This document shows, piece after piece, positions 24,607 to 60,903 of a DNA stretch of 64,000 nt. The stretch lies in the IMG/VR virus record IMGVR_UViG_3300031963_000004, positions 62,001 through 126,000 of that record. One strand, given 5' to 3'. A program made the position numbers and the translations under genes. Numbering within the stretch: the stretch's first letter is position 1; each line of letters begins with the position of its first letter. The notes beneath the pieces were generated by a model. That model was given only the letters and a program-made list of their open reading frames with translations, was not told where the DNA came from and made no database searches.

Positions 24607-26157
24607 TCAACCTAGGACTGCATAGAAGGGTAATGGGGGCAAGAATTCCTCATAATCACGTATTTGTGTCTCCAAATCCTGATGAAAATCTCCTAAATCC
24701 TGCATCATTCTGACTGCTAGAAGTGCTGCCATTACCAAATCATCTGTTTCCCCTATCTTAGCTTTGTAAGACCCGGAGTTTGCTACAAAGGATTTAAGTT
24801 CGGAAACAAAGCTTTTACTATGAATTTTCATCTTTTTGGATTCAATTAAATGCTTCAATTTAGCACAGGCCGCTAGTTTAGTTTTGTTAGTTGTATTATA
24901 CCCTTTACGCTTTCTGATACCTGCTTCAGTCAAAAATATACCCGAAATGTTATGCTCACCGTATTCCTGTAGAGAAATTAATGCTGCTTCACCAATACTA
25001 TTATTTTCAATGCTGTAATAAACATTGTTTGGTTGCTTAGTAATATCAACAATATAATCGGTAATTTGTTTAATTAACCTAATCTGTTCAGGTATAACAG
25101 TTTGATTGTGTTTCCACTCTCCTATTTGTGTTGTCGTATTTGCTTCAAATATTTGTATTGCAGCAGGATCGCCACCAGTACCTAAACTTGGGTCAAGTGA
25201 CACCACATAAATCATATCTTTCTGAGGTTGTTTGTACCAACGAATCTGACCTACTTTGGTAATAGGATCTATACCTTCTAGTTCAAATAGTGTTGAGGGA
25301 GCGATAAGTGTTTCATCAGCAATAATAAATTCACAATCCATTTCACGACGGAAACGATCAGTACCAAGTTGCGCCCGCATTTGCTCGGCCCATGTATCGT
25401 CACGTTCAGGATGTTCTCTCCAAAATGCACGATACGCACGGAAACCATTGACACCAACTTCAGTTTGATTTCCGAATTCATCTTCTGTTTTGTTTGCCTG
25501 TTTCCAAATTAATGCGAATTGATCTTCGTCACTGTTTGGGGTACTTGTAATAATTGCTTTACCACCTGTTGACAATGTAGGGGTAATAGATGTCCAAAAC
25601 TCTTGCGCTATTGTAGGTCTAACGAATGCAAATTCGTCAAGATATAATAATGAGATAGAAAGACCACGACCTGTGTTTTCAGTAGTCGTAGCACTTACTA
25701 TACGACTTCCATTGTCAAAGTCAAGTGAACCTTTGTTATAAGTTACAACCCCTGCTTTGATATGTAGAGGGCAGTTTTCATATGCATATCTGATACGCTG
25801 CATAATTTCTTGAGCACCAGTATATTTGTGTGCAGCGACTAATATAGTGCTGTCAGGAACAAACATAGCATACCATAATAGATAACCAGCAGCACTGGTA
25901 GACTTACCTGTTTGTCGTGGCATAAGACTAATACTGAAGCGGTACTTGTGATACGTTTCAATTAATCTTTTCTGATAGTCCCATGGATGATAAAGCATAC
26001 TACCACGTGTTGGATGCTGTATGTAAAAGAAGTTATCCATAAAATACAAATAACCCATTACAGGGTCACTGCACTTTATAAAATCATCCAATTGATTACT
26101 ATCAGCAAAAACTGTTTTGCTGTAAGGGGTTTTTAGTAAGGTAGGTAAACCACTCAT
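24607..26157 (-). CDS. gp17: Terminase large subunit, T4 gp17-like
   Basis: MPRQTGKST, LYLDEFAF, ITSTPN, SLDPSLG, DDLVMA. Confidence 0.95.
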   Translation of the reverse strand: MSGLPTLLKTPYSKTVFADSNQLDDFIKCSDPVMGYLYFMDNFFYIQHPTRGSMLYHPWDYQKRLIETYHKYRFSISLMPRQTGKSTSAAGYLLWYAMFVPDSTILVAAHKYTGAQEIMQRIRYAYENCPLHIKAGVVTYNKGSLDFDNGSRIVSATTTENTGRGLSISLLYLDEFAFVRPTIAQEFWTSITPTLSTGGKAIITSTPNSDEDQFALIWKQANKTEDEFGNQTEVGVNGFRAYRAFWREHPERDDTWAEQMRAQLGTDRFRREMDCEFIIADETLIAPSTLFELEGIDPITKVGQIRWYKQPQKDMIYVVSLDPSLGTGGDPAAIQIFEANTTTQIGEWKHNQTVIPEQIRLIKQITDYIVDITKQPNNVYYSIENNSIGEAALISLQEYGEHNISGIFLTEAGIRKRKGYNTTNKTKLAACAKLKHLIESKKMKIHSKSFVSELKSFVANSGSYKAKIGETDDLVMAALLAVRMMQDLGDFHQDLETQIRDYEEFLPPLPFYAVLG

Positions 26158-30511: not shown

Positions 30512-30757
30512 TTATGCAGAAAGTATACCACTTAGGTACAGAATTGACATAATTATGTTAAGAATCCACATGCTAGGCTGACGCCAAAGAAACCCTAACC
30601 AGCCCCAAAGAAAGGCAGTTAATAGCCCAAAATACTTGTTGATAGGTACAAAATCATGACTGGTAAGATAGACTGTGATTAGTGCGAAAACTGTTGCTGC
30701 CCATTTTACATAAAAATCTATATCTTTTCCAAATAGTTTTATATCACCTTGGTACAT
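30512..30757 (-). CDS. Small multi-TM membrane protein (holin candidate)
   Basis: About three hydrophobic helices; adjacent to the spanins; start placed at MYQGD. Confidence 0.5.
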   Translation of the reverse strand: MYQGDIKLFGKDIDFYVKWAATVFALITVYLTSHDFVPINKYFGLLTAFLWGWLGFLWRQPSMWILNIIMSILYLSGILSA

Positions 30758-31709: not shown

Positions 31710-31942
31710 TCGTACTTTAACTTATAATATGTAAATTGCTCATCAGTCATCGTAGCTTCAATTGTATATTCCCAACCCCACGATATTGGTCTTGTACCTC
31801 TATGCCAAGTAGGGTCAATAGTATTTTCCATAACCCATTTACCTTTTTCTGATTGCTCAAATTCTACTAAATTTTGTGCAGCCCATAAATCAGGATCTTC
31901 AACGTCTCCCATATGAAATTGATGAACTACTACTTTTTTCAT
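31706..31942 (-). CDS. Hypothetical protein
   Basis: 78 aa; 4-bp overlaps on both sides. Confidence 0.6.
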   Translation of the reverse strand: MKKVVVHQFHMGDVEDPDLWAAQNLVEFEQSEKGKWVMENTIDPTWHRGTRPISWGWEYTIEATMTDEQFTYYKLKYE

Positions 31943-32796
31943 ACTGCCATTGTAGCTTTAATAGGCTCATGACATTGATAATCTTCTAAATGAATATCTT
32001 CCATTGTAAATTGTTCAATATCTTTAATATCAAAATTCAAGAATAATCTTGGCAAAGGATATTCTTCTCTTGAAAGCTGTTCTTTTACCTGTTCAACATG
32101 ATCCTTATAAATGTGTGTGTCACCCATACTAATTATTAGTTCACCTACTTTATATTTGCAAACGTGAGCAATCATGTGTGTAAGTAACGCATAACTTGCT
32201 ATGTTAAAAGGTAATCCTAAAAATACATCAACACTACGTTGATACATATGGCAGCTTAATTCATTATTCTTGTTAACGTAAAATTGACTCATTACATGAC
32301 AAGGAGGTAGTGCCATATCTTCTAATTCAGCAACGTTCCATGAACTAAGTATGTGACGCCTGCTATGTGGATCTTCTTTTAATTGAGTTATTAAAGTTTG
32401 TAATTGGTCTATAGCAACACGCACCGGTGGCTTATCAGTTTTTACCCAATCACGCCATTGTACTCCATAGATACGACCAAGATCGCCTTCAAACTTTGCT
32501 TTATGTTTCCAATACGGTGCAAGTGCGTTCCATGTCCATATTGTTACTGCACCATCACGTGTACCGTGTGTTATTTCTGCAAGTCTACGCTCGTCACTTG
32601 AGCCTTCAATGAACCAAAGTAGTTCACCGACGCAAGCTTTCCAAGCCAACTTTTTAGTTGTGATGGCTGGAAAGCCCCTACGCAAATCAAAGCGAATACT
32701 ACGTCCAAACACACTATAAGTGCCAACACCAGTTCTATCATCTCTGACCTCTCCGTTCTCTAAAATATCTTCTAATAAGTCATGATACTGTTTCAT
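31939..32796 (-). CDS. thyA: Thymidylate synthase ThyA
   Basis: DRTGVGT, ELLWFI, MALPPCH, YQRSVDVFLGLPFN, DTHIY. Confidence 0.97.
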   Translation of the reverse strand: MKQYHDLLEDILENGEVRDDRTGVGTYSVFGRSIRFDLRRGFPAITTKKLAWKACVGELLWFIEGSSDERRLAEITHGTRDGAVTIWTWNALAPYWKHKAKFEGDLGRIYGVQWRDWVKTDKPPVRVAIDQLQTLITQLKEDPHSRRHILSSWNVAELEDMALPPCHVMSQFYVNKNNELSCHMYQRSVDVFLGLPFNIASYALLTHMIAHVCKYKVGELIISMGDTHIYKDHVEQVKEQLSREEYPLPRLFLNFDIKDIEQFTMEDIHLEDYQCHEPIKATMAV

Positions 32797-34537: not shown

Positions 34538-35806
34538 TTATTTGTCATCATAAATTGCGTATGTACCAAACGGGGGATTAGGATTTTTGTCACCGTGAAT
34601 GATCCATGTAGTATCACAGTAATCTGGATCGCCCCAAGTACCGCAAGGATAACCATCTGTGAACACAATCAATCGTTTTGGTACGTTGCCTGCTTCTTTG
34701 AGATAATCAAAGATTACACCAAAGTCTGTGCCACCTCCACCTTGTGGTTCATATTCATCAATCGTATCAAGATTTTCACTTGTAAAATCTTTGCAGTTAT
34801 AAATGTCAGTATCAAAGCAGAATACATGAACTTTGTAACCATCAAATGCTTCCATCATGCCTGCGATTTCACTTAAAAAAGCTTTTGCTTGATGATCACC
34901 AATTGAACCACTCATATCAAGTGCAACAACTACATCAATTTCTTCGCCCGGTGTCATACCTGGCATTACTGCATCCATATGCCAACCTCTACGTGAGGGG
35001 CGCATCCAACTATAGTCAGTACGAATTGCACTAGTCAAGTTAGTTTGAATCAATTCACGCCAGGGCATAACTGGGTTGGTAACATCTTTGATAAGACGTT
35101 CAACACCTTTTGGCAATGAACCTGCTTCGGCACTTTGTGCAGCCTGAAGAATTGCCTGTTTCATTTCTTGGCGGGCTTGTTCACGTTCCTCATCAGACAT
35201 TTTGGGACGCTTACTTTTACCTTCACCTTCTTCACCATCATCACTATCACCATCACCATCCATGTGATCGTCAAGCATTTTATCAATGAGATCATCTAAT
35301 GAAATTTTTTGTACGTTTTTCATTAGGTCATCATAAATTTCTTCGGCTGCTTTACCGTCATACTTTGTTTCGTATAAGCAAGGTACAGTAGTAATAAAGT
35401 CACCGACTTTATGACGTTTTAGGTCTGCGTTTACTGCATAGTCATCAGCAATATTCCAAATCTGAGGATCACGTGTGCCTCGGCGACCCATATGATCGTA
35501 AACAACATGTAACACTTCATGCCCAACAAGAAACTCTACTTCTTTGGGCTTAAGCATCATGATGAATCTTGAATTGTAGTAAAACTTTTTGCCGTCAGTA
35601 GCAGCAGTGCCGCACCATTCATCAGCATTTACAAGTGTAAGCCTTGTTGCAAGATTACCAAAAAAACTATGGCGTAATAGTAGACCAATACGTGCAGTGA
35701 CCAATCGTTCACGGGCTGCATGATCTACTTTTGGATCAGTAGGTCCAATTAGATTGTCGAATTTTTTATTGCGTTTTTTCTTTTTTCCACCGATAACGTC
35801 ACTCAT
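34538..35806 (-). CDS. DUF2201-type metallopeptidase plus VWA domain protein
   Basis: TAATDG, HEVLH (HExxH), acidic linker, MIDAS DMSGS, GGGGTDF, FTDG. Confidence 0.88.
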   Translation of the reverse strand: MSDVIGGKKKKRNKKFDNLIGPTDPKVDHAARERLVTARIGLLLRHSFFGNLATRLTLVNADEWCGTAATDGKKFYYNSRFIMMLKPKEVEFLVGHEVLHVVYDHMGRRGTRDPQIWNIADDYAVNADLKRHKVGDFITTVPCLYETKYDGKAAEEIYDDLMKNVQKISLDDLIDKMLDDHMDGDGDSDDGEEGEGKSKRPKMSDEEREQARQEMKQAILQAAQSAEAGSLPKGVERLIKDVTNPVMPWRELIQTNLTSAIRTDYSWMRPSRRGWHMDAVMPGMTPGEEIDVVVALDMSGSIGDHQAKAFLSEIAGMMEAFDGYKVHVFCFDTDIYNCKDFTSENLDTIDEYEPQGGGGTDFGVIFDYLKEAGNVPKRLIVFTDGYPCGTWGDPDYCDTTWIIHGDKNPNPPFGTYAIYDDK

Positions 35807-36151: not shown

Positions 36152-37249
36152 TTAGTTACCTGCCTCAACAATGTACTTACCATATTTCTTATGGAAGTCA
36201 TCAAAGTTTTTCAATTGACTGGGTTCAATCGGAAGCTTGTAAGTCTTAAGTGCAATTTTTGCACTAACGACAACTAGTTCAGTTTCAAAGTTTGCCATTG
36301 CATACGCAAAGAAATTGTCAGCCATTTCGTGGAACTTTTTCATGTCCACTTTCTTATTGTCAACTGCCTCTTTCAATTCATAGCACATTGAAATTGCCAG
36401 TGAGTACATAGCCGAAACTTCTTTTACTTGCAAATCCTTAACCTTACCGTTGAGAATATCAGTTGGCTCAGGCATCTTACCTGCAAGTTTACGGTGTGCA
36501 GCAAACTTAACTGCAAGACCTTCACCAATCGCACCACTGATAAGATTGAATTGAGTATCAGTGTCCGATGTTTCATCCTGCAATAGATCAGAAACAAAGC
36601 ACCAAGTACGGGGAGTAGCAAATGCGCGGCTACTGGATTTGTTGTCAAAGTCATACAAGTCTTGCTTAGCAAAACTCAAATAGCCAACTACATCCTTGTG
36701 AATTTTCTTGTCAACAGCCCACAACTGCCATGCATTAAAGTCGGGGCGCATTTCAAGGTGAACAAAACGATTCGCAAGCGGCATCGGCATACGATAAGTA
36801 ACACCTTTATCACTATCACGATTACCTGCTGCAACAATCACAACATTGTCGGGAAGTTTATATTTACCTACACGGCGATTAAGAATCAACTGATAACCTG
36901 CAGCCTGAACTGCGGGCGGTGCAGAGTTCATTTCATCTAAGAAAAGAACTACGATAGGATACTTACTTGCAAGTTCCTCATCAGGCAAATCAACTGGGGG
37001 TGCCCAATCCATTTTACCATTTTCTTTATTGAAGTATGGGATACCACGAATGTCAGTAGGTTCCATTTGCGCCATACGCAAATCAATCATAAGACCGCCG
37101 AGTTCTTCTGCGACCTCAGCAACTACCTCAGATTTACCAATACCGGGCGGACCCCAAAGAAAAACGGGTCGTTTAATTTTGAATGCGCTAAGCAATGCTT
37201 TGCGGGTTTGAATACTAGTGATAGTATGATTATCAGATACTTTTGCCAT
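36152..37249 (-). CDS. MoxR-like AAA+ ATPase
   Basis: GPPGIGKS, LFLDEMN, AAGN, PLANRF, ATPRTW. Confidence 0.9.
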   Translation of the reverse strand: MAKVSDNHTITSIQTRKALLSAFKIKRPVFLWGPPGIGKSEVVAEVAEELGGLMIDLRMAQMEPTDIRGIPYFNKENGKMDWAPPVDLPDEELASKYPIVVLFLDEMNSAPPAVQAAGYQLILNRRVGKYKLPDNVVIVAAGNRDSDKGVTYRMPMPLANRFVHLEMRPDFNAWQLWAVDKKIHKDVVGYLSFAKQDLYDFDNKSSSRAFATPRTWCFVSDLLQDETSDTDTQFNLISGAIGEGLAVKFAAHRKLAGKMPEPTDILNGKVKDLQVKEVSAMYSLAISMCYELKEAVDNKKVDMKKFHEMADNFFAYAMANFETELVVVSAKIALKTYKLPIEPSQLKNFDDFHKKYGKYIVEAGN

Positions 37250-37339: not shown

Positions 37340-37492
37340 TTATTGGGTCGCTTCCAATTCTTGAATTTGTTTGTAGAGTTTCCAACGCTGGGCATCAAGT
37401 GCTGCATTGGTTTCTTCATCAAAGCAACCAGCCTGCTCATCCAAATGAACCAGTTCTTCGTACAATACATCAATTAAATTTTGGTCAGCCAT
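37340..37492 (-). CDS. Small early protein
   Basis: Start at MADQNL (37492) with a GAGG SD. Confidence 0.55.
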   Translation of the reverse strand: MADQNLIDVLYEELVHLDEQAGCFDEETNAALDAQRWKLYKQIQELEATQ

Positions 37493-37496
37493 AATT

Positions 37497-37721
37497 TTAC
37501 GCCTCAAACATAGCAGCAGATTGTGCTGCCAATTTTTTAATTGCACGACCAGCTGCCTCACGGCTATTAGTAAATGCATAATCATCACTGAGACTATTAA
37601 AGCCGTGATACAACTCCCACTTACCATCTACCAACCATTCAACCTTAACATCATATGCAGTATCGAACGGTGAACCGTCATGTACGATACGAACCTTACC
37701 AAAATCATTTGCTACATACAT
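37497..37721 (-). CDS. Small early protein
   Basis: Start at MYVAND (37721) with an AGGAG SD. Confidence 0.6.
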   Translation of the reverse strand: MYVANDFGKVRIVHDGSPFDTAYDVKVEWLVDGKWELYHGFNSLSDDYAFTNSREAAGRAIKKLAAQSAAMFEA

Positions 37722-37731
37722 ATTCTTCTCC

Positions 37732-38049
37732 TTATGCCCAAGTAATTTCTTTTGCGGGAAATTCAATCTTACCATCAAACTCAAGTTGGTCACGCTCAAA
37801 CTGTGTGAGGAATTCGTTATCAACCAACTCCCAATCAACGATTGTTTCTATGACATAATCGTCAGCCCGTTCAATTTGTTCACGCAAAACCATTACAGCG
37901 GTTGTTGCTTCTTCCTCATCCCAAATACCAGTGACAACATACTCATCGCCACCCTTAGCTTTCCAATAAGCGTCCTTACCTTTGCCGATAGAACCATCTT
38001 CGTTGAATGCGTAGTTTTCAAAAACTTGGGTATAAATGACTACTTTCAT
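37732..38049 (-). CDS. Early hypothetical protein
   Basis: 105 aa; AGGAG SD; own promoter. Confidence 0.65.
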   Translation of the reverse strand: MKVVIYTQVFENYAFNEDGSIGKGKDAYWKAKGGDEYVVTGIWDEEEATTAVMVLREQIERADDYVIETIVDWELVDNEFLTQFERDQLEFDGKIEFPAKEITWA

Positions 38050-38079
38050 GTTGTTCTCCTATTGTTTGACTATACCGTT

Positions 38080-38108
38080 ATTATATAACCTTTTGGATTT
38101 ATTGTCAA
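38080..38108 (-). promoter_or_regulatory. Early sigma70 promoter
   Basis: TTGACA-ataaatccaaaaggtta-TATAAT. Confidence 0.85.
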
Positions 38109-38121
38109 CCAAAAAGTGTTA

Positions 38122-38352
38122 TCAATCTAGCAACGTCATATAAGCTTCGGCGTTGTTGTCGATGAACCAATTGATGCCCTTGCGAACACCATTGTAATCG
38201 CCCATCAATTCGCAGCCCTTAAGATAGTCATAAACAGCGACTTCCTCAGGGGTAAGCATACAAGTTTCGCCCGAGAACGGGTTGCGTACTTCAACAGGCT
38301 CAGAGTCCATAATCTTGATACCGGGGAAAATCTGAAAAATTGACTTAGACAT
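38122..38352 (-). CDS. Early hypothetical protein
   Basis: 76 aa; AGGAG SD; own promoter. Confidence 0.65.
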   Translation of the reverse strand: MSKSIFQIFPGIKIMDSEPVEVRNPFSGETCMLTPEEVAVYDYLKGCELMGDYNGVRKGINWFIDNNAEAYMTLLD

Positions 38353-38382
38353 TTATCGCTCCTTGTTATTGACTATACAGAC

Positions 38383-38411
38383 ATTATATGCCCAAATGGA
38401 TTTATTGTCAA
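38383..38411 (-). promoter_or_regulatory. Early sigma70 promoter
   Basis: TTGACA-ataaatccatttgggca-TATAAT. Confidence 0.85.
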
Positions 38412-38608
38412 CCAATGGATTTTGTTGCTTTTTTAGCACGAATTTGCTGACTGAGTTTGCACGGATTGCTTTCTTCCCAGCCCCAAGATTTAGCGTTATT
38501 TTCTGGATTTTTGTTACAATTATTGTAAAGCCTTTTGGCTTGTGTTTTTGACAAGTTAGTTTCGATTCTAGCAGTACCGTCGGCAAACTCAACATAAAAG
38601 TTAAACAT
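38408..38608 (-). CDS. Early hypothetical protein
   Basis: 66 aa; GGAG SD; own promoter. Confidence 0.6.
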   Translation of the reverse strand: MFNFYVEFADGTARIETNLSKTQAKRLYNNCNKNPENNAKSWGWEESNPCKLSQQIRAKKATKSIG

Positions 38609-38639: not shown

Positions 38640-38668
38640 ATTATATACCCAAACGGATTTATCGTCAA
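38640..38668 (-). promoter_or_regulatory. Early sigma70 promoter
   Basis: TTGACG-ataaatccgtttgggta-TATAAT. Confidence 0.85.
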
Positions 38669-38670
38669 CC

Positions 38671-38700
38671 AAAAAAAATGTTGCTAATTAGCAACATTTT
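38671..38700 (-). terminator. Terminator after the aminotransferase gene
   Basis: aaaatgttgcta-at-tagcaacatttt palindrome followed by an A-run on +. Confidence 0.65.
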
Positions 38701-38724
38701 CAACATTGAAACATTTACAATTTG

Positions 38725-39891
38725 TTAATTATTTCGCCAGTACTCACTAGCAGTGGCGACACCGCTACCTGGGACGACTTTAATACCAGTATCAAGCATA
38801 GCCATTTCTGCTCCGGCTATAGCAGCCATTAAGTGTACTTCATTCATATCACCTAGATGACCTATGCGGAAAAGCTTACCTGCTACTTTACTAAGTCCTG
38901 CACCCAATGATAGGTTATAGCGTTTGTATGCTCTACTAATAACATCACTACCATTAAATCCTTCAGGTACTATAATTGCTGATACTGTGTCACTATACCA
39001 TTTTGGATCTTTGGCACATAAGTCTAGTTGCCAACCGTCAATTACTGCACGGCGAACGCCTTCTGCAAGATAGTGATGGCGTTTAACAATATTATCTAGA
39101 CCTTCTTCTTCAATCATATTAAGTGCTTCTGCAAGTCCATATAACAATGACAATGCAGGTGTATATGGAAAATAACCAGTTGCATTAGAATTAACCATAT
39201 CAGTTAAATCAAAGTAACTGCGTGATGATTTTGCAGATTTGGTTTTATCCAACGCCTTTTTACTAGCACATAATATACCTAATCCAGCAGGTAACATGAA
39301 CCCTTTTTGTGATCCTGTTACTGCCATGTCAACACCCCATTCATCAAATTTAAAATCTAATGACCCAAGTGAACTTACAGCATCAACAAATAATAATGCA
39401 GGGTGATCACATTCGTTCAGCGCCCAACGCACTTCACTAATACTTGATGTGACTCCCGTAGCAGTTTCATTGTGACATGCTAACACTGCTTTGATTTCTT
39501 GATTTTTATCGTTTGCTAATATTTCAGCAAACTTAGCGGATGGGATACCTGTACCCCACTCGCAGTCTACGATTTCTACATCTAATCCATGTTTTAAACA
39601 CATTTCTATCCAGAGATGACTGAACTGGCCAAATCGTGCAGCTAGAACTTTGTCACCGGGACTTAGTGTATTTGTTATTGCGGCTTCCCAGCATCCTGTA
39701 CCAGATGAGGGGAAAATAAAGGGTGTTCCGTGTTCTGTACGGAATACCTTCTTTAATTTTGGAAATAATTGTGCCGAAAGTTCAGGAAACTTCGGTGAGC
39801 GATGGTCTTCCATAGACACCATCATTGCTCTCATAATACGATCAGGGATGTTTGTAGGCCCAGGTACAAACAAGAAATTACGACCAGCCAT
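38725..39891 (-). CDS. sgaA: Serine-glyoxylate aminotransferase (class V, PLP-dependent)
   Basis: GRNFLFVPGPTNIPDRIMRAM, EDHRS, FGQFSHLW, HNETATGV, GSQKG (PLP Lys), FPYTP, FRIGHLG; closely tracks the SgaA sequence as I recall it. Confidence 0.88.
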   Translation of the reverse strand: MAGRNFLFVPGPTNIPDRIMRAMMVSMEDHRSPKFPELSAQLFPKLKKVFRTEHGTPFIFPSSGTGCWEAAITNTLSPGDKVLAARFGQFSHLWIEMCLKHGLDVEIVDCEWGTGIPSAKFAEILANDKNQEIKAVLACHNETATGVTSSISEVRWALNECDHPALLFVDAVSSLGSLDFKFDEWGVDMAVTGSQKGFMLPAGLGILCASKKALDKTKSAKSSRSYFDLTDMVNSNATGYFPYTPALSLLYGLAEALNMIEEEGLDNIVKRHHYLAEGVRRAVIDGWQLDLCAKDPKWYSDTVSAIIVPEGFNGSDVISRAYKRYNLSLGAGLSKVAGKLFRIGHLGDMNEVHLMAAIAGAEMAMLDTGIKVVPGSGVATASEYWRNN

Positions 39892-40023
39892 AGTATTCTC
39901 CTATGCTCTAAACTAGCAGCGAGATAATACTTAGTTCTGTTAAAACTCTAAAAAATATAAAATTTGACCAAAGCTGTCCTAACCAAATCATAGATAAATA
40001 CTAAAATCAATAAGGAATAACAG

Positions 40024-43000
40024 ATGAGTTGGCCAGCCAATCCAGTAAACGGACAAAGAGTTCAGATTAACGGTGTTTTATATGAATTTAACGCAGCGAA
40101 TGAAACCTGGGATAGAATAGGTGGGTATCCTGATAACTTTATAGTTGAGTTCTTACAAACTCCTAATTTAGTAGTCACCGGTAGAGCGACCTTTACTGAT
40201 GCCGGGAACGTTAAAATTCAAGGTGGTTTCGCCAACTATGTCTTAGTTACAGACGGATCCGGTAATCTTTCTTGGCAACCACAAGCTGATGTTTCAGCAG
40301 CGGGTGTAAACAATGAGGTTCAATTTAATACAAATGATGCACTTGATAGTTCTGCATCATTTACTTTTGACAAAACATCAAATACATTAACTGTCCCTAG
40401 GATAGCGAGTACCCTTACTACATCCGCACAACCAAATATTACTAGTGTTGGTACACTAACAAGTTTAAATGTTAGTGGTAATGCTACCTTTAGCAACAAT
40501 ATTACTGCTAACAATTTTGCTGGCAACTTCTCAGGAAATTTTACAGGAAATTATCGTAGTCCTGGTTCCAACACAGAATTATTATTCAATAACCAAAGTA
40601 ATATTGGTGCTAGTAACAAACTTACATTTGATGGCACTACGCTAAATGTTCAGGGTAATGTCACTGCAACTAATGCTAATTTAGGAAACTTAGTTACTGC
40701 TAATTTTATAAATTCAACATTAACAGTTGCCAATCAACCTAATATTACTAGATTAGGAACTTTAGTAAATCTAACATCATCAGGTAACATCGTAGCACCT
40801 AATTTTGTAGGTAATATAGTAGGTGGTAATATATCAGGTAACTTTGTTGCGCCTGGTTCTAATACACATATGTTACTTAACTATCAAGGTAACATAGCAG
40901 CTACCTCCAATATTACTTTTGCTGATGGATTAATGAATGTTGCAGGTAATATTAATGCAGCTAACATAACCGCTGTTAGTGACATTACTGCAACTACACT
41001 AACAGGTAGTTTGAAAACTGCAAGTCAACCTAATATTACTAGCTTAGGTACACTAACAGGATTAAATGTAACTGGTAATGCTACTATATCAGGTAATGTT
41101 ACTGCTGCCAATTTAAGAGGTAATGTAATTGGTGGTACAATTACAGGTACATTTAGTGCTCCAGGTAATGTTACAGAAGTAGTTTATAACAAACAGGGTT
41201 CATTAGGAACAAGTAGTAATTTTAAATTTGATAATGAAACACTTACTGTAACTGGTAACACGATTTCAGGTAATGTATATGCTAACAGTGGTACGATTGG
41301 TGCTAGTTCTATTGTAGGTACAATTGCAACAGCTAACCAAACAAGTATTACAAGAGTTGGTACATTAGTAAACGCAGCGGTAACTGGTAATGTTACAGCA
41401 GGAAACGTTTATGCTAACATGGGAACAATTGGTGCGGGTTTCCTAACTGGTACGTTAACTACAGCATCACAACCTAATATTACAAGTGTAGGGACAATTA
41501 CTTCTTTAACTGTATCCGGTAACTCAACTTCAGGCAATGTATATGCTAACAGTGGAACTATTGGTGCGAATAGAATAACAGGTAATCATTATACTGCCCC
41601 TACTAATTCGTCTAACACGCAGATATTAATAAACAATCAAGGTAATATCACCGGTTCAAGTAATTTAACATTTAACGGAACTGTATTAAATGTTGCAAGT
41701 AACGTAAACGCAGCAAACATTACAGCAAGTAATGTAACTGCAACTTTATTTACAGGAACATTAACTACACCTTCGCAACCTAATGTAACTAGTGTTGGCA
41801 CACTAACAAGTTTGAATGTTGGTAGTAATGTAGATGTAGCGAATGTTCTAACTGCTAATAAGATAATAGCGAATAGTATTGAGACTGATGTAATACTGGG
41901 TCAATTAACTGCGCCTGCAGGACTAGCAGCAAACAATCAGGTCTTGTTTAATTTAAATGGTGTAGTAGATTCTAGTTCAAAACTTGAATTTAATCCTATA
42001 GGTACAGCTACTTTAACATTAAATGGTAATTTAACTACAGGAAATGCAAATTTAGGAAACAGAGTTACTGCTAATTATATTCAAGGTAGTATTTTACCTA
42101 TTTCAAGTTCACAACCTAACATCACAACAGTTGGCACATTAACTGGACTTGGTGTAGATGGGCCTATTAATATAGCAAATAGTGTAATTACTATTGACAG
42201 TAACTCATATATTGTAGGTAACTTAATCCCTGTAACATCTCCTACAAGCGCAACTGACACATTTACAGGTGACGGTGTACAAACATTATTTGTATTGTCC
42301 GTACTACCTTACCCTGGTGACATAGTAAACATTACAATTGATGGTGTTGCAGAAAATCCTCTAAATTATACAATCCTTAATAAGGACTTAACATTTAATA
42401 CTGCTCCGGCAGTTGGAGCAGCAATTGTAGTACAAATGCAGTTAAATACTCCAATTTATGATTTAGGATCTCCGACTGCTAGATGGCGTGATTTATGGTT
42501 ATCTGGTACTACTATTAAACTAGGTACTGCTACAATTACAAGTACAGATACAGGTACAATTGATACAGGAGGTGGTGAGTTCCAATCTGAAGTTTTAACT
42601 TCTACTGCTACTGATATTGCTCCATTCATTGTTTATAGTAACGTAATGGTTGGTAATTTAAATGTACAATATCTACATGGTTATGAACCATCTACAAGTA
42701 ATCTAGCAAACACGATTGTATTAAGAGATGAATTTCATAATTTTGAAGCAAATGTAATTACAGCAAGATTAGAGGGTAATGCTACAAGATCAAATACAGT
42801 AATTAATCCAGCGCAACCAAATATAACAAGTGTAGGTTTACTCACACATTTAGACGTAGATAATAAACTTACCGCAGCTAACATAGAACTATCATCAAAT
42901 ATTAGTGCAGAATATTTTAAGGGTAGCGGAGCTGAATTATACAATATTAATGGTGCTAATGTAAGTGAAGTACCGTTAGCTACATTCGCTACTGATGCAC

Positions 43001-46000
43001 AAGATGCAGTATTCGCAGTTGATGCAGAAACAGCACAGTTTGGCGTAAATGTAACAGGATGTTCTCAACCAAATATTACAAGTGTAGGCACATTAATATC
43101 TCTTAAAGTTACAGGACAAATTGAAGCAGGAAGTATTGATGCTTCATTAGGTAATATTAAAGGTGCTAATTTCATTGGTGGTAATGTAAGTGGTAATATT
43201 TCAGGCACATTTAGAGCTCCAGGTGGGATAGCATCAAATACGGAAGTTCTTTTCAATAAAGAAGGAAATATCGGCGGAAGTGAAGGATTTAAATTTAATA
43301 GTTTAGTTAATTCGTTGACTATTACAGGTAAATTTAATTCTATTGATGCTAATTTAGGTAATCTAGTTGACGCAAACTTCTTTAGAGGTTCCGGTAATAA
43401 CTTAAGTAATATTCGTGGATCTAACGTTAACGGTGAGGTAGCGTTTGCTGCAACTGCAAATAGTGTAGCCGGTGCTAATGTTTCAGGTCAAGTAGCTAAT
43501 TCGTTAGTTGCAGGTACTGTTTACACTGCTGCACAACCAGCAATCACTAGTGTTGGTACATTGACTGACTTAAATGTTAATTCAGGAACCCTAGTAACAA
43601 GTAATCCAATAGACCTATTGCAAACATGGAATAACAGCAGTGTTGCATTTACTGGTATAAAACAAGTTGTTACTGATACACAAAGTTCAGCAGAATCATT
43701 ATTAATAGACCTACAACAAAACGTAGGTGGTGTAGCTACAAGTAGATTCAAAGTTAATAAAATAGGTAATCTTACTACAGGTAATGTTATTACTGGAAAC
43801 ATTGAGGGTACTATAATTACAGGTGCGCAACCTTTTATTACAAGCTTAGGTACACTATCAACATTAACTATATCTGCAAATATTCAATCAGGTAATGCTA
43901 ATTTAGGTAATCTAGCTAGAGCAAACTTCTTTAGTGGTGATGGCTCATTGTTAACAAATGTTCCTGCAGGTAACAGATTACAAAACGGTACAAGTAACTT
44001 GCAAATAGTTAACAATGGAAATATAAACATTGCTATTGATGGCACAAACGATGTCTTAACATTAGGAAACGTGTCTGGGGTCTACGTAGCTAACCTCAGA
44101 GGCAATCTACTTTCAGGTAATGCAAACTTAGGTAATTTAGTAACTGCAAATTTCTTTGCAGGAAACGCAAGTAATTTATTTAATATAGTTGGTGCTAATG
44201 TTACCGGTACAGTATCAAATGCAACTCATGCGTGTACAGCTAATACAGTAACAAATGCAACACAAACTAATATTACAAGATTGGGTACATTAACCGAACT
44301 TACACTATCAAGTATAGCAGACCCAAGCTTAGGTAATAATGTAACTGCAAGTTTCTTTACTGGTGTAATTACTCAAGCAGCATCAGCACAACCTAACATT
44401 ACAAGTGTAGGTAGATTGACTGGTCTAACAGTAGGAAATGCAACTGCAAACACTGTATTTGGTAACGGAACCATTACTGCTGCTGGAAATATTAGAGGTG
44501 CTAATATTGAGGGTAACCTAGTAGGCAATGGTAGTGGCATAACATACTTAAATGGTGGTGTAGTTAATGGTGATGTTCCGAGTGCTGCTACTGCTACTAC
44601 AGCAGGAACTGTACTTTCATCTTCACAACCAAATATAACAAGTGTTAATACTTCAAGTGGTTTAACATCATTAAAAGTTTCAGGCGAAACTGATTTAATA
44701 GGTAATGTAATAATTAGAAGTAATCTTACTGTACAAGGTACTACGATTACAGCTAATGCAACTACAATGAATGTTAGAGATCCTATTATACAAATAGGTG
44801 GGAATACGTCAGGTGGTGCGTTACCAAACGACGACGGAAAAGATAGAGGAATTTTACTACATTATCACAACGGAGTAACACCAGTTGATGGATTTATGGG
44901 TTGGGATAACGATTTAGAGCAATTTACTTTTGCTAGTAGAGTAAGTGTAACCAATGAAGTTGTTACATTCTCAGAATTAGGTAATATAAGAGCAAGTTAT
45001 TTCTTAGGTAACGGTTCTCAGTTAGAAGGTTTACCTCCACCAAACGAAATATTTAAAGGTACAAGTAATGTAAAAATTCCTGATTTAGACGGTAATGTAA
45101 CTATATCTGCAAACAGTGTTGCCAACATTGTACAAATACACGGTAATAGACCTAGTATAGGTAATGGAGTAATTGTTGCAGGTAATCTTACTGCAACAAG
45201 ATATTTTGGTGACGGAAGTCAATTAACGGGAGTAACAACAACAGCGATTTCCAATGGCACAAGTAATGTTACTTTTGCGGGTGCAGGTGGAAACATTACA
45301 ATGGCAGTTGGTGGCGTTTCTAATGTATTACAAATTGATAGTGTTGGTAACGTAGAGATAAAGGGTTTATTAAAAACAGGTACAGGTTCAGGTGGTAACA
45401 TTGCAGGTGCGAATGTAATTAGTGCAAATACATTTATCGGTAATTTAGCCAATGGTACAAGTAACATAAGAATTACACAAAATGGCAATGTCGGTATATC
45501 CTCTAACGGTGTATCAAATGCTGTAATAATTGCCGGTGGACTTGCTAATGTATTGACTGTAGCAGGTAATATTGATATTGGAAGTAATTGGTTTAGAGGT
45601 AACGGTGCGTTGTTAACTAGTTTACCAACTCCTACTTCTATGACTAACGGTACAAGCAACATTGTTGTTGGGTCAAGCACTGACGTAACTATTAGCGCAA
45701 ATGGTCAATCATCAATTATTGCCGTAAAAGGTAGCGGAACAGCGGGCGCAACTGGTGCAAATGTCAGTGGTTATCTTTCTGTATCCGGTATAATTACCTC
45801 AACAATTGCAACCGGCACAGCACCATTGACTGTAACAAGTACAACACGTGTTGCTAATTTAAACGTTAACTATGCAAACGTAAGTGACTTTAATGTAGTC
45901 ACCGCACAAACAACTGGAACATTATATCCTGCATTGATAAGTGGTGCTACTTCAGCAAATTATGCTTTAGGTGCAAACGCAGGTTTATCGTTTAATGCTG

Positions 46001-46524
46001 CAACTGGTGCATTGACTGCAAGTTCTTTTGTTGGTACAGCGACTGGACCATTGGCGAATGGTACAAGTAACGTCAGTATTGCATCAAGTGGCGGCAACGT
46101 AACTGTTAGTGCGGGCGGCACTGCAAACTTATTAACAGTTACAAGCACAGGTATATTAGGCACATTTGTAAATAGTTCGGATGTTATAAGAGATTACGCA
46201 ACTGTAAGTGTATCGCATGATTATAACCTAGCATCTGTTTTATATGTAAGTGGAGTTACTGGTGCATTGTCCTTAACATTCACAAATATTCCTACAACCA
46301 ATAGCAGGGCACTTGTTATTCCTGTTATTGTTGCACATGGTGCTACGGCTATGACTTATCCAACTTCAATATCAATCAACGGGGTAGGCGGACAAACAAT
46401 TAATTATTTACAAGGTACGACCCCAACTGCTAGAACTAACAAAACAGAAGTATTAGGATTAACATTAATTAGAACAGCTTCTAGTACATGGGTAGTTTTA
46501 GGTTTAGTTTCAAGTTACGGATAA
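40024..46524 (+). CDS. Giant repetitive tail-fibre/virion surface protein (2166 aa)
   Basis: N/T/G/S-rich; about 14 QPNITSVGTL repeats and 6 GTSN(V/I/L) repeats; late promoter at 39995-40000. Confidence 0.85.
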   Translation: MSWPANPVNGQRVQINGVLYEFNAANETWDRIGGYPDNFIVEFLQTPNLVVTGRATFTDAGNVKIQGGFANYVLVTDGSGNLSWQPQADVSAAGVNNEVQFNTNDALDSSASFTFDKTSNTLTVPRIASTLTTSAQPNITSVGTLTSLNVSGNATFSNNITANNFAGNFSGNFTGNYRSPGSNTELLFNNQSNIGASNKLTFDGTTLNVQGNVTATNANLGNLVTANFINSTLTVANQPNITRLGTLVNLTSSGNIVAPNFVGNIVGGNISGNFVAPGSNTHMLLNYQGNIAATSNITFADGLMNVAGNINAANITAVSDITATTLTGSLKTASQPNITSLGTLTGLNVTGNATISGNVTAANLRGNVIGGTITGTFSAPGNVTEVVYNKQGSLGTSSNFKFDNETLTVTGNTISGNVYANSGTIGASSIVGTIATANQTSITRVGTLVNAAVTGNVTAGNVYANMGTIGAGFLTGTLTTASQPNITSVGTITSLTVSGNSTSGNVYANSGTIGANRITGNHYTAPTNSSNTQILINNQGNITGSSNLTFNGTVLNVASNVNAANITASNVTATLFTGTLTTPSQPNVTSVGTLTSLNVGSNVDVANVLTANKIIANSIETDVILGQLTAPAGLAANNQVLFNLNGVVDSSSKLEFNPIGTATLTLNGNLTTGNANLGNRVTANYIQGSILPISSSQPNITTVGTLTGLGVDGPINIANSVITIDSNSYIVGNLIPVTSPTSATDTFTGDGVQTLFVLSVLPYPGDIVNITIDGVAENPLNYTILNKDLTFNTAPAVGAAIVVQMQLNTPIYDLGSPTARWRDLWLSGTTIKLGTATITSTDTGTIDTGGGEFQSEVLTSTATDIAPFIVYSNVMVGNLNVQYLHGYEPSTSNLANTIVLRDEFHNFEANVITARLEGNATRSNTVINPAQPNITSVGLLTHLDVDNKLTAANIELSSNISAEYFKGSGAELYNINGANVSEVPLATFATDAQDAVFAVDAETAQFGVNVTGCSQPNITSVGTLISLKVTGQIEAGSIDASLGNIKGANFIGGNVSGNISGTFRAPGGIASNTEVLFNKEGNIGGSEGFKFNSLVNSLTITGKFNSIDANLGNLVDANFFRGSGNNLSNIRGSNVNGEVAFAATANSVAGANVSGQVANSLVAGTVYTAAQPAITSVGTLTDLNVNSGTLVTSNPIDLLQTWNNSSVAFTGIKQVVTDTQSSAESLLIDLQQNVGGVATSRFKVNKIGNLTTGNVITGNIEGTIITGAQPFITSLGTLSTLTISANIQSGNANLGNLARANFFSGDGSLLTNVPAGNRLQNGTSNLQIVNNGNINIAIDGTNDVLTLGNVSGVYVANLRGNLLSGNANLGNLVTANFFAGNASNLFNIVGANVTGTVSNATHACTANTVTNATQTNITRLGTLTELTLSSIADPSLGNNVTASFFTGVITQAASAQPNITSVGRLTGLTVGNATANTVFGNGTITAAGNIRGANIEGNLVGNGSGITYLNGGVVNGDVPSAATATTAGTVLSSSQPNITSVNTSSGLTSLKVSGETDLIGNVIIRSNLTVQGTTITANATTMNVRDPIIQIGGNTSGGALPNDDGKDRGILLHYHNGVTPVDGFMGWDNDLEQFTFASRVSVTNEVVTFSELGNIRASYFLGNGSQLEGLPPPNEIFKGTSNVKIPDLDGNVTISANSVANIVQIHGNRPSIGNGVIVAGNLTATRYFGDGSQLTGVTTTAISNGTSNVTFAGAGGNITMAVGGVSNVLQIDSVGNVEIKGLLKTGTGSGGNIAGANVISANTFIGNLANGTSNIRITQNGNVGISSNGVSNAVIIAGGLANVLTVAGNIDIGSNWFRGNGALLTSLPTPTSMTNGTSNIVVGSSTDVTISANGQSSIIAVKGSGTAGATGANVSGYLSVSGIITSTIATGTAPLTVTSTTRVANLNVNYANVSDFNVVTAQTTGTLYPALISGATSANYALGANAGLSFNAATGALTASSFVGTATGPLANGTSNVSIASSGGNVTVSAGGTANLLTVTSTGILGTFVNSSDVIRDYATVSVSHDYNLASVLYVSGVTGALSLTFTNIPTTNSRALVIPVIVAHGATAMTYPTSISINGVGGQTINYLQGTTPTARTNKTEVLGLTLIRTASSTWVVLGLVSSYG
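41269..41560 (+). repeat. Three intragenic repeats at 132-bp (44-aa) period
   Basis: GGxAAyGTxTATGCTAAC starts at 41269, 41401 and 41533 (GNVYANxGTIGA). Confidence 0.8.
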
Positions 46525-46527
46525 TAT

Positions 46528-50486: not shown

Positions 50487-50546
50487 ACTATAACTATTAA
50501 ATATTTATTGCAAATGAATATTTTTTATTTAAAGGAGACACACAGT

Positions 50547-59984: not shown

Positions 59985-60082
59985 TTGTAAATAAATGGAT
60001 CACGTTTTCTTGCTTCTCTTAATTTTTTTCTGTGTAATAATTCTCTGCGAATTTTATTTAAAATCATTCTAATAAAATACAT
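59981..60082 (-). CDS. 33-aa basic peptide coupled to the carbamoyltransferase (not in the ORF track)
   Basis: MYFIRMILNKIRRELLHRKKLREARKRDPFIYK; its TGA overlaps the carbamoyltransferase ATG. Confidence 0.65.
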   Translation of the reverse strand: MYFIRMILNKIRRELLHRKKLREARKRDPFIYK

Positions 60083-60086
60083 AATT

Positions 60087-60902: not shown

Positions 60903-60903
60903 T

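What the first reader, a model, noticed from the sequence alone, without database searches (positions are those of the whole stretch)
38725..39891. Phage-borne serine-glyoxylate aminotransferase
It is full length with an intact PLP lysine and closely follows the serine-cycle enzyme SgaA. It is flanked on both sides by phage genes, with a phage-style SD and terminator. It could boost glycine/C1 supply for nucleotide synthesis (feeding the methylene-THF used by ThyA), detoxify glyoxylate, or support C1 assimilation in a methylotrophic host. I do not recall this as a standard auxiliary metabolic gene.
Basis: partly seen in the sequence, partly recalled or inferred. Interest (0 to 1): 0.62.

Follow-up and report, generated by a model that had tools for sequence, protein, structure and literature searches.

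The report
Phage-borne serine-glyoxylate aminotransferase gene
A large uncultivated freshwater phage carries an intact, selectively maintained copy of the bacterial serine-cycle enzyme that turns glyoxylate into glycine, a rarely noted kind of virus-encoded metabolic gene.

Summary
Window 38725-39891 (-) is a 388-aa class-V PLP aminotransferase with all catalytic residues (K196, D170, R342), an AGGAG ribosome-binding site and a hairpin+T8 terminator. It lies deep inside a phage record of 223 kb (about 63% complete), between the large terminase and the portal and capsid genes. More than 24 independent assemblies reproduce both junctions.

It is not BhcA. It scores 590 bits against a cut-off of 650, and true bhcABCD-linked enzymes form a separate clade. 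Its bacterial orthologues (72-80% identity, freshwater Burkholderiales) sit in glyA-sgaA-hprA modules. The Polynucleobacter-like ones sit in a full serine-cycle cluster (glyA-sgaA-hprA-ftfL-mtkAB-ppc-mcl). So serine:glyoxylate is the best-supported activity.

The phages carry sgaA alone. It occurs in three phage lineages and at two or three genome positions. dN/dS is 0.06-0.11, the codon usage matches the phage (GC3 0.26 against 0.47-0.62 in bacteria), and the bacterial C-terminal tail is missing. Distribution among related phages is patchy.

The likely role is extra capacity to convert glyoxylate to glycine, and serine to hydroxypyruvate, during infection. The physiological pay-off is inferred, not shown. 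AGXT already appears in bulk lists of viral metabolic genes, so this is a new, well-documented member of a known kind.

The parts
38725..39891 (-). sgaA-like gene: 388-aa class-V PLP aminotransferase of the serine:glyoxylate (SGAT/AGT1/SgaA) subfamily. Key residues are K196 (Schiff-base lysine), D170, T143, Y243-T244-P245, R342 and the E28-D29-H30-R31 substrate loop.
39898..39902 (-). Shine-Dalgarno AGGAG, 6 nt upstream of the ATG at 39891
   Evidence: read directly from the sequence
39924..39952 (-). Weak sigma-70-like promoter match (TTTAGA-17-TATTAT, 9 of 12) in the 132-nt divergent intergenic region. It is no better than chance.
   Evidence: 8 sites found against 7.8 expected in shuffles
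38667..38701 (-). Intrinsic-terminator-like hairpin (12 pairs, 3 of them G-C, 4-nt loop) followed by a T run, starting 24 nt after the stop codon
38640..38668 (-). Promoter-like site (TTGACG-17-TATAAT, 11 of 12) directly after the terminator. It would start the next transcription unit of small ORFs and so marks the aminotransferase gene as its own unit.
37340..38608 (-). Block of five small ORFs (66, 76, 105, 74 and 50 aa) downstream of the aminotransferase, none with a family match. The 74-aa ORF (37497-37721) and the 50-aa ORF (37340-37492) recur next to the aminotransferase in divergent phages (L009, L016, L019).
40024..46524 (+). Divergently transcribed 2166-aa ORF, fibre-like, with a weak PHROG tail-fibre hit. 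It forms the upstream junction. The variant phages L003 and L004 have a different, shorter region in its place.
31939..32796 (-). Thymidylate synthase ThyA, 6 kb downstream on the same strand. It consumes methylene-THF, so a metabolic link to the aminotransferase is possible but only inferred.
24607..26157 (-). Large terminase subunit, a phage hallmark gene 12.5 kb to the left of the aminotransferase

Best explanation
The ORF encodes a functional homodimeric PLP enzyme of the serine:glyoxylate aminotransferase subfamily. It is carried as an auxiliary metabolic gene by an uncultivated freshwater jumbo phage of about 350 kb. The gene descends from the sgaA gene of the glyA-sgaA-hprA (serine-cycle type) module of freshwater Burkholderiales. 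It has been in phage genomes long enough to take on phage codon usage and to lose the bacterial C-terminal tail. At least three phage lineages keep it under purifying selection. In the infected cell it most likely runs the usual ping-pong reaction on K196-bound PLP: serine (perhaps also alanine or asparagine) gives its amino group to glyoxylate, producing glycine and hydroxypyruvate. The phage brings only this one step. Host SHMT, hydroxypyruvate reductase and the glycine-cleavage and folate enzymes would have to handle the products. The net effect would be more flux of glyoxylate into glycine, which feeds purines and, through host C1 enzymes, the methylene-THF used by the phage ThyA. It would also push serine carbon into glycerate and central metabolism. 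Shown here: gene integrity, phage location, family placement, the operon context of the orthologues, and selection. Inferred: amino-donor preference, direction of flux in vivo, and the benefit to the phage.
For: The catalytic set is intact and the protein is full length. The gene lies inside a phage record, and many assemblies reproduce both junctions. BhcA is excluded by three results. The score is 590 bits against the 650 cut-off. The BhcA tier forms a separate clade with 100/100 support, and a member of that tier was checked to sit in a real bhcABCD cluster. The phage protein has the SgaA state at all 17 columns that separate BhcA from SgaA, and it has E28 as plant SGAT and SgaA do. The bacterial orthologues support the serine:glyoxylate activity. 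SHMT lies directly upstream in at least 52 of 80 loci. hprA overlaps the 3' end of the aminotransferase gene. Polynucleobacter-like contigs carry the full glyA-sgaA-hprA-ftfL-mtkA-mtkB-ppc-mcl cluster. A neighbouring clade (60-65% identity) sits in sga-hprA-?-fchA-mtkA clusters in genomes that carry mch. Purifying selection acts among the phage copies: dN/dS is 0.06-0.11, for example 0.020/0.278 between the window and L003. GC3 is 0.26 in the window gene against 0.47-0.62 in bacterial genes. Related phages carry the gene at other genome positions. A metatranscriptome library holds a 1169-nt contig about 94% identical to the gene, while the neighbouring genes are nearly uncovered.
Against: No enzyme assay exists, and the amino donor cannot be read from the sequence. 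The H30-R31 pair, which aligns with the serine-contacting Y35'-R36' of Arabidopsis AGT1, is shared with BhcA, so it does not discriminate (PMC6797613). The phage carries neither glyA nor hprA next to the gene. No SHMT, GCV-T or DHFR was found in the 223 kb held, which is only about 63% of the genome. The link to ThyA is therefore only proximity. Distribution is patchy. None of the 80 closest helicase relatives has the gene beside the phrog_1250 gene, and five large related records lack it in the parts held. The gene is therefore dispensable. The RNA evidence comes from assembled contigs of a variant, and DNA carry-over cannot be ruled out. The host genus is unresolved.
Confidence: 0.72

Rival explanations
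1. It is a BhcA-type aspartate:glyoxylate aminotransferase, the entry enzyme of the beta-hydroxyaspartate cycle, and makes glycine and oxaloacetate from glyoxylate and aspartate.
For: BhcA is the top NCBIfam model (E 2e-177, 590 bits). The H30-R31 substrate pair is identical in BhcA-tier proteins.
Against: The score is below the curated cut-off of 650, as are the bacterial orthologues at 597-615 bits. Proteins scoring 725 bits or more form their own clade with 100/100 support on a long stem, and one of them was checked to be followed by BhcB, BhcC and BhcD equivalogs. The phage protein differs from that clade at 17 clade-diagnostic columns plus E28. Neither the phage loci nor the orthologue loci have bhcBCD next to the gene.
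Confidence: 0.06
2. The enzyme is a broad glyoxylate aminotransferase. Its value to the phage is removal of reactive glyoxylate or scavenging of nitrogen and glycine from whatever donor is available (alanine, asparagine, glutamate). It would not support the serine cycle or C1 metabolism.
For: The nearest solved relative, Arabidopsis AGT1, uses serine, alanine and asparagine as donors (PMC6797613). The phage keeps only the aminotransferase and drops glyA and hprA. The candidate host genomes have GlcD-like glycolate oxidase genes, and most lack glyoxylate carboligase, so glyoxylate has few sinks. Polynucleobacter has a complete glyoxylate cycle (PMC3308952).
Against: The conserved operon context of the orthologues points to serine as donor and hydroxypyruvate as product. 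No data show glyoxylate stress during infection.
Confidence: 0.17
3. The gene is host DNA that entered the record through mis-assembly, mis-binning or a prophage-host boundary, and is not a phage gene.
For: Identity to bacterial genes is high (up to 80%). The IMG/VR record is linear and incomplete.
Against: The identical gene with both flanks occurs in at least 24 contigs from separate samples, one of them 369,578 bp long. Independent DNA contigs bridge both ends. Phage hallmark genes lie on both sides. GC3 is 0.26, which fits the 36.5% GC phage and not any bacterial homologue. Fifteen or more related phage contigs carry their own diverged copies.
Confidence: 0.02
4. In phages the enzyme has been recruited for a non-central-metabolic task such as amination of a sugar or cell-surface precursor. 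In the L005-type phages it sits at the end of a cluster of glycosyltransferase, epimerase, cytidylyltransferase and methyltransferase genes.
For: The P0075 context shows Glyco_transf_17, Glyco_transf_9, epimerases, PfkB, cupin, CTP_transf_like and GGACT genes directly upstream. The window has an epimerase at 30744-31709.
Against: Known sugar aminotransferases belong to a different family (DegT/DnrJ/EryC1; general knowledge, not tested here). The phage proteins keep 75-80% identity to operon-defined sgaA orthologues and every family-invariant residue. In the window the gene is a separate transcription unit that is not next to sugar genes.
Confidence: 0.03

Closest known systems
SgaA, the serine-glyoxylate aminotransferase of the bacterial serine cycle
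   Same: Both share the class-V fold-type-I family and the catalytic residues, including the E-D-H-R substrate loop. SgaA-cluster proteins (L126, L128, L129), which sit in sga-hprA-?-fchA-mtkA clusters in mch-positive genomes, are 60-65% identical to the window protein and branch beside its clade. The window's 72-80% identical bacterial orthologues lie in glyA-sgaA-hprA(-ftfL-mtkAB-ppc-mcl) clusters.
   Different: The phage copy is stand-alone, with no glyA or hprA neighbour. It lacks the 17-30-aa C-terminal tail of the Burkholderiales proteins, which in bacteria is encoded in the overlap with hprA. Its codon usage is AT-rich. In the careful tree the branching order among SgaA-cluster proteins, tier-2b proteins and the phage+Burkholderiales clade is unresolved.
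Arabidopsis thaliana AGT1 / SGAT (PDB 6PK1, 6PK3), the photorespiratory serine:glyoxylate aminotransferase
   Same: It is the best solved-structure match (E 6.5e-134, 450 bits, aligned end to end). The equivalents of Pro15, Gly16, Thr148, Lys201, Thr250, Pro251 and Arg347 are all conserved, as P10, G11, T143, K196, T244, P245 and R342.
   Different: The serine-contacting Tyr35' is His30 in the phage enzyme and in all the bacterial groups except tier 2b. There is no plant-specific C-terminal helix or peroxisomal targeting signal. The setting is a virus of bacteria.
BhcA, the aspartate-glyoxylate aminotransferase of the beta-hydroxyaspartate cycle (NCBIfam NF045640)
   Same: It is the closest curated HMM and also takes glyoxylate as acceptor with glycine as product. 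Identity to proteins of the BhcA tier is about 49-55%.
   Different: The window protein scores below the equivalog cut-off, falls in a separate clade, differs at 17 diagnostic columns and has no bhcBCD neighbours.
Phage auxiliary metabolic genes for nucleotide and C1 supply and host-pathway bottlenecks (for example ThyA/ThyX and PstS), and the KEGG class AGXT (K00830) as listed in viral AMG surveys
   Same: The gene is host-derived, single-step, patchily distributed among related phages and under purifying selection. It sits in a genome that also carries ThyA, PstS and a phosphate porin. AGXT is named among virus-associated AMGs in a freshwater mesocosm metagenome study (PMC12370912).
   Different: Full-text searches found no study that analyses a phage SGAT gene, its origin or its context. 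GenBank phage genomes hold only distant class-V aminotransferases of 33% identity or less.

Membership tests
Class-V (fold-type I) PLP aminotransferases, Pfam PF00266 | Domain match above the gathering score, with the Schiff-base lysine and the aspartate that contacts the pyridine nitrogen | tested here: met
   88.3 bits against a cut-off of 21.5. K196 and D170 are invariant in the 72-sequence alignment.
SgaA/SGAT serine:glyoxylate aminotransferase subfamily | Groups phylogenetically with enzymes whose serine:glyoxylate role is defined by experiment or operon context, and not with BhcA or alanine-type AGTs | tested here: met
   The best PDB hit is Arabidopsis SGAT at E 6.5e-134, against 1e-35 to 1e-49 for human, Anabaena and archaeal AGT/SPT enzymes. 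The protein falls in a 98/98 clade with the Burkholderiales orthologues. Together with the SgaA-cluster proteins, that clade is separated from BhcA with 100/100 support.
SgaA/SGAT serine:glyoxylate aminotransferase subfamily | Gene linked to serine-cycle partners (glyA, hprA, mtkAB, ppc, mcl) | tested here: not met
   The feature is met for the bacterial orthologues. It is not met for any phage copy, which carry sgaA alone. Linkage is a property of the pathway and not of the enzyme, so this lowers the claim 'part of a phage-encoded pathway' and not the enzyme assignment.
SgaA/SGAT serine:glyoxylate aminotransferase subfamily | Measured preference for L-serine as donor and glyoxylate as acceptor | not testable with these tools
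   This needs an enzyme assay. The residues that contact the serine hydroxyl in AGT1 (Y35', R36') correspond to H30 and R31, which BhcA also has, so sequence alone cannot decide.
BhcA (NCBIfam NF045640 equivalog) | Score at or above the curated cut-off of 650 bits | tested here: not met
   590 bits. True members in sampled genomes score 725-760 bits.
BhcA (NCBIfam NF045640 equivalog) | Adjacent bhcB, bhcC and bhcD genes | tested here: not met
   These genes are present next to a BhcA-tier gene in G137. They are absent from the phage loci and from the orthologue loci.
Phage auxiliary metabolic gene (AMG) | Host-like metabolic gene inside a bona fide phage genome, with viral genes on both sides and reproducible junctions | tested here: met
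Phage auxiliary metabolic gene (AMG) | Maintained by selection in phage lineages and not a recent passenger | tested here: met
   dN/dS is 0.06-0.11 and GC3 has shifted to the phage value. There are three phage lineages, and no phage copy is more than 81% identical to a bacterial copy.
Phage auxiliary metabolic gene (AMG) | Expressed during infection | tested here: inconclusive
   Contigs from two metatranscriptome libraries lie on the gene at 94-97% identity, and the neighbouring genes are nearly uncovered. These are assembled contigs of variants, and DNA carry-over is not excluded.

The most novel reading that the evidence does not exclude
Several lineages of abundant freshwater jumbo phages have kept, and possibly acquired more than once, the entry enzyme of their Burkholderiales hosts' serine-cycle and glyoxylate assimilation route. 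They would use it to steer the processing of C1-C2 acids in lakes (glyoxylate, glycolate and formate from algal exudates and from photo-oxidised humic matter) towards glycine and nucleotides during infection. This would be a virus-encoded serine-cycle step with a measurable effect on freshwater carbon flow.
Probability: 0.3. Interest if true: 0.65.

Novelty: new member of a known kind. Interest (0 to 1): 0.5.

Why it matters
Polynucleobacter- and Limnohabitans-type Burkholderiales are among the most abundant freshwater bacteria, and their use of small photochemical and algal C1-C2 compounds is an active question. A phage gene for the glyoxylate-to-glycine step occurs in many lakes: 17 runs from about 15 studies hold this exact locus. 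That gives a concrete, testable handle on how viruses rewire this part of lake carbon and nitrogen metabolism. The analysis also turned up a conserved glyA-sgaA-hprA module, which in some lineages is a full serine-cycle cluster with formate-THF ligase, in these non-classical-methylotroph bacteria. That finding is of interest in its own right. For AMG curation, the case shows that the nearest curated model (BhcA) would give the wrong name.

Tried and rejected
- **GenBank phage genomes.** tblastn found only six distant hits of 33% identity or less, mostly unannotated Staphylococcus, Enterococcus and gut records. Megablast of 20 kb around the gene found nothing. No cultured relative is available.
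- **Wrong marker.** I used PF02289 meaning to find fch, but it is mch (H4MPT cyclohydrolase). The result was still useful as a marker of classical methylotrophy: it is present in the SgaA-cluster genomes and absent from the Polynucleobacter-like G003.
- **Host identification.** I tried to name the host through the phage porin. Homologues of 80-99% identity are plentiful, but the sources give no organism names. The host genus stays unresolved.
- **Read-level junction check.** The raw-read run X22 yielded only 5 reads, all on a repeat, so no read-level check was possible. Contig-level bridging from another study (X7) was used instead.
- **Partner genes in the phage.** SHMT, GCV-T and DHFR were not found in the 223 kb held. 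The record is about 63% complete, so this does not show absence.
- **One acquisition or several.** The free tree shows three phage lineages, but the AU test does not reject a single phage clade (p 0.249). The question is left open.
- **A family-wide core gene.** Rejected. None of the 80 closest helicase-bearing relatives has the gene beside the phrog_1250 gene, and five large related records (25-69% complete) have no copy.
- **Small downstream ORFs and giant ORFs.** Pfam gave nothing for the small ORFs and only a Gly_rich_2 hit for the 1221-aa ORF. Tandem Repeats Finder found nothing in 40024-50193.
- **Steps not run.** No structure was predicted, because 450 bits to a solved structure made it unnecessary. 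No complex prediction and no alternative genetic code were used.
Full report
**1. What is at the coordinates**

Window 38725..39891 on the minus strand is an uninterrupted ATG-to-TAA ORF of 388 codons. Pfam assigns it to Aminotran_5. The closest solved structure is Arabidopsis serine:glyoxylate aminotransferase AGT1 (6pk1/6pk3), at E 6.5e-134. The alignment runs from residue 3 to 386 of the query and from 8 to 391 of the plant enzyme, so the protein is full length.

I aligned 72 family members: phage copies, their bacterial relatives and three more distant tiers. The window protein keeps all 58 invariant residues. Mapped onto the published AGT1 active site (PMC6797613), these include:
- K196, the PLP lysine (Lys201 in AGT1);
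- T143 (Thr148);
- T244 and P245 (Thr250 and Pro251);
- R342 (Arg347);
- P10 and G11 (Pro15 and Gly16).

D170, the conserved aspartate expected to contact the pyridine nitrogen, is also invariant.

An AGGAG lies 6 nt before the start codon. A 12-bp hairpin with a T8 tail follows the stop codon. Directly after the terminator comes an 11-of-12 sigma-70-like promoter. Two perfect TTGACA-17-TATAAT sites precede the next small ORFs. The aminotransferase gene therefore looks like its own transcription unit. Its own promoter match is weak and no better than chance.

**2. Is it really phage DNA?**

The window is bases 62001-126000 of a 223,151-bp IMG/VR virus record rated 63% complete. The identical protein also occurs on a 369,578-bp contig, which suggests a jumbo phage of roughly 350 kb. 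The overall layout is:
- left of the gene: DnaB helicase, primase, a second helicase, SSB and the large terminase;
- right of the gene: two giant fibre-like ORFs, PstS, a phosphate porin, a carbamoyltransferase and radical-SAM genes;
- further right in the record: the portal and the major head protein.

The exact protein is recorded on at least 24 contigs from separate JGI and ENA samples. In every case the 2166-aa ORF lies on one side and the same small ORFs, then AAA/VWA and ThyA genes, lie on the other. Genes further away differ between strains. Contigs of an independent DNA run bridge both ends of the gene without differences. Seventeen runs from about fifteen freshwater studies hold at least half of the locus. 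The chimera hypothesis is rejected.

**3. Which aminotransferase?**

The best NCBIfam model is BhcA, but at 590 bits it falls under the 650 cut-off. I sampled 251 Pseudomonadota genomes with that model and found three score tiers.
- **Tier of 725 bits or more.** One member was checked. It is followed by BhcB, BhcC and BhcD equivalogs, so it is a real beta-hydroxyaspartate-cycle cluster.
- **Tier of 540-615 bits.** This holds the relatives of the phage protein. It also holds three proteins from mch-positive genomes (L126, L128, L129). Two of them were checked. Each is followed by a 2-hydroxyacid dehydrogenase, an unnamed gene and FchA. In G161 the next gene is malate-CoA ligase beta. This is the classical serine-cycle arrangement.
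- **Tier of 420-470 bits.** I used this tier as the outgroup.

In both the quick and the careful IQ-TREE analyses the BhcA tier is a separate clade with full support. The phage proteins and the freshwater Burkholderiales proteins form one clade (98/98). That clade branches next to the SgaA-cluster proteins. At the 17 columns that separate BhcA from SgaA, every phage copy has the SgaA state. E28 also matches SgaA and plant SGAT, whereas BhcA has I, L or M at that position.

**4. The most informative evidence: context of the bacterial orthologues**

The closest cellular proteins (72-80% identity) come from freshwater Burkholderiales MAGs and isolates. These are labelled Polynucleobacter, Limnohabitans, Rhodoferax, and Burkholderiaceae, Oxalobacteraceae or Comamonadaceae.

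My first look at one contig suggested a stand-alone gene. A systematic survey changed that picture:
- an SHMT gene lies directly upstream in at least 52 of 80 loci, which is essentially all loci whose flank is long enough;
- these genomes hold a second SHMT elsewhere;
- a 2-hydroxyacid dehydrogenase (hprA-type) overlaps the 3' end of the aminotransferase gene by about 40 nt in most loci;
- Polynucleobacter-like contigs continue with formate-THF ligase, malate-CoA ligase beta and alpha, PEP carboxylase and a malyl-CoA-lyase-type gene, which completes a serine-cycle gene set.

A gene that sits between the enzyme that makes serine and the enzyme that reduces hydroxypyruvate is, by context, a serine:glyoxylate aminotransferase. 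The sampled candidate host genomes also have GlcD-like glycolate oxidase genes. Four of the five lack glyoxylate carboligase. G003 lacks mch. The module therefore looks like a route for glyoxylate, glycolate and formate, not classical methanol methylotrophy. That last point is inference.

**5. The gene in phages**

IMG/VR holds 21 loci with relatives. All are phage contigs that share replication or other genes with the window. They fall into three types.
- **Window type (L002-L004).** Identity is 97-100%. The variant phages L003 and L004 keep the gene, its SD, its terminator and the next ORF at 91% nucleotide identity. The 10 kb of giant fibre-like ORFs next to it is replaced by about 4.6 kb of different sequence.
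- **L005 type.** About 16 contigs with GC near 0.40 carry a 391-aa protein of 75-78% identity. The gene sits between a sugar-modification cluster and the phrog_1250 and helicase genes, which is a different genome region.
- **L021.** This contig has GC 0.456 and a copy of 68% identity. The gene lies in the same neighbourhood as in the window but in another slot, and it branches weakly with the Comamonadaceae proteins.

No phage locus has glyA, hprA or any other serine-cycle gene. Phage proteins end right after the conserved W-R motif and lack the 17-30-residue bacterial tail. Among phage copies dN/dS is 0.06-0.11. GC3 of the window gene is 0.26, against 0.47-0.62 in the bacterial genes. This points to long residence under purifying selection.

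A single origin of the phage copies is not rejected (AU p 0.249), and several origins are not excluded.

The gene is accessory. None of the 80 closest helicase relatives has it beside the phrog_1250 gene. Five large related records contain no copy in the parts held.

Two small ORFs travel with the gene. The 74-aa ORF at 37497-37721 is 90-97% identical to an ORF just upstream of the aminotransferase in L009 and L016. The 50-aa ORF recurs near the copy in L019.

**6. Expression**

Two metatranscriptome libraries contain contigs on the gene. One is a 1169-nt contig at about 94% identity that covers 38897-39891. The other library gives short pieces at 93-97%. The flanking genes are almost uncovered. 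This is suggestive only. The contigs come from variants, contigs cannot show strand or transcript ends, and DNA carry-over is not excluded.

**7. Mechanism and role**

Shown: an intact SGAT-type enzyme that a phage encodes and maintains.

Inferred from family knowledge: a homodimer that runs a PLP/PMP ping-pong reaction. The amino group of serine (AGT1 also accepts alanine and asparagine) passes to glyoxylate and gives glycine and hydroxypyruvate.

Inferred role: the phage adds capacity at one step of a host route and relies on host SHMT, HprA and folate enzymes. Glycine feeds purine synthesis. Through host glycine cleavage or SHMT it also feeds methylene-THF, which the phage ThyA consumes 6 kb away. 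The 223 kb held contains no SHMT, GCV-T or DHFR gene, so the C1 link rests on proximity only. Detoxification or general glyoxylate amination is the main rival for the physiological role.

**8. Comparison with what is known, and novelty**

The enzyme family is well known. Phage AMGs as a category are well known. AGXT (K00830) already appears in a list of virus-associated AMGs from freshwater mesocosms (PMC12370912). I found no paper that analyses a phage SGAT, and no cultured phage has one.

The finding is therefore a new, well-supported member of a known kind. It has some added value:
- its origin in a serine-cycle-type module of abundant lake bacteria;
- its multi-lineage, multi-position distribution;
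- the caution that the nearest curated model (BhcA) would give the wrong name.

Read laying was given 3401 letters. Only genetic code 11 was used.

Noticed in passing
window 50508-51572 (+) and 51582-52988 (+): A PstS-type phosphate-binding protein is followed directly by a phosphate-selective porin (Porin_O_P). The phage thus carries a two-gene phosphate-uptake set. The porin has hundreds of 80-99% identical relatives in freshwater metagenomes, some on contigs of 200-370 kb. The pair is retained in the variant phage L003.
   Followed up: partly
window 36152-37249 (-) and 34538-35806 (-): A MoxR-like AAA ATPase is paired with a DUF2201_N metallopeptidase/VWA protein. The pair is conserved (61-73% identity) in the higher-GC phage L021, again close to the aminotransferase.
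   Followed up: no
window 38383-38411, 38080-38108 and 38640-38668 (-): Two perfect (12 of 12) and one 11-of-12 TTGACA-17-TATAAT sites each sit just upstream of a small ORF of unknown function. This looks like a run of host-RNAP (early) promoters. The region as a whole has no more promoter-like sites than shuffled sequence.
   Followed up: no
window 37497-37721 (-) and 37340-37492 (-); L009:3892-4068, L016:2367-2543, L019:8768-8911: A 74-aa ORF is 90-97% identical over 59 residues to an ORF just upstream of the aminotransferase in L005-type phages. Those phages' other shared genes are only about 55-66% identical to the window's. A 50-aa ORF likewise recurs near the L019 copy. Small genes seem to travel with the aminotransferase, or to be exchanged with it.
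   Followed up: partly
window 40024-46524 (+) and 46528-50193 (+): Giant ORFs of 2166 and 1221 aa (the second has a Gly_rich_2 domain) are the hypervariable part of the locus. About 4.6 kb of different sequence replaces them in L003 and L004. They contain dispersed 90-100-nt repeats (about 40417-40517, 41026-41114 and 41764-41861). Contigs from many organisms pile up on 40422-40535 in both DNA and RNA runs. They are probably host-range fibres.
   Followed up: partly
window 54835-63901 (-): A cluster holds a 1222-aa ORF with no family match, a Nol-like carbamoyltransferase (58494-59984), a 271-aa ORF and two radical-SAM proteins (60904-61845 and 61842-63173). It may be a modification or biosynthesis module.
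   Followed up: no
L149:8625-20038 (also L032, L027, L033); bacterial loci L023-L102: Freshwater Burkholderiales carry a conserved glyA-sgaA-hprA module. The aminotransferase C-terminal tail is encoded in a roughly 40-nt overlap with hprA. Polynucleobacter-like genomes extend the module to ftfL-mtkA-mtkB-ppc-mcl, a full serine-cycle gene set, in a genome (G003) that has no mch.
   Followed up: partly
G000:C1:132253-147993 (-) and G000:C1:17893-20169 (-), outside the window: The phage record holds a 5246-aa ORF and a strong match (E 2e-234) to an ATP-dependent protease family (phrog_4871). ARAGORN found no tRNA gene in the 223 kb.
   Followed up: no
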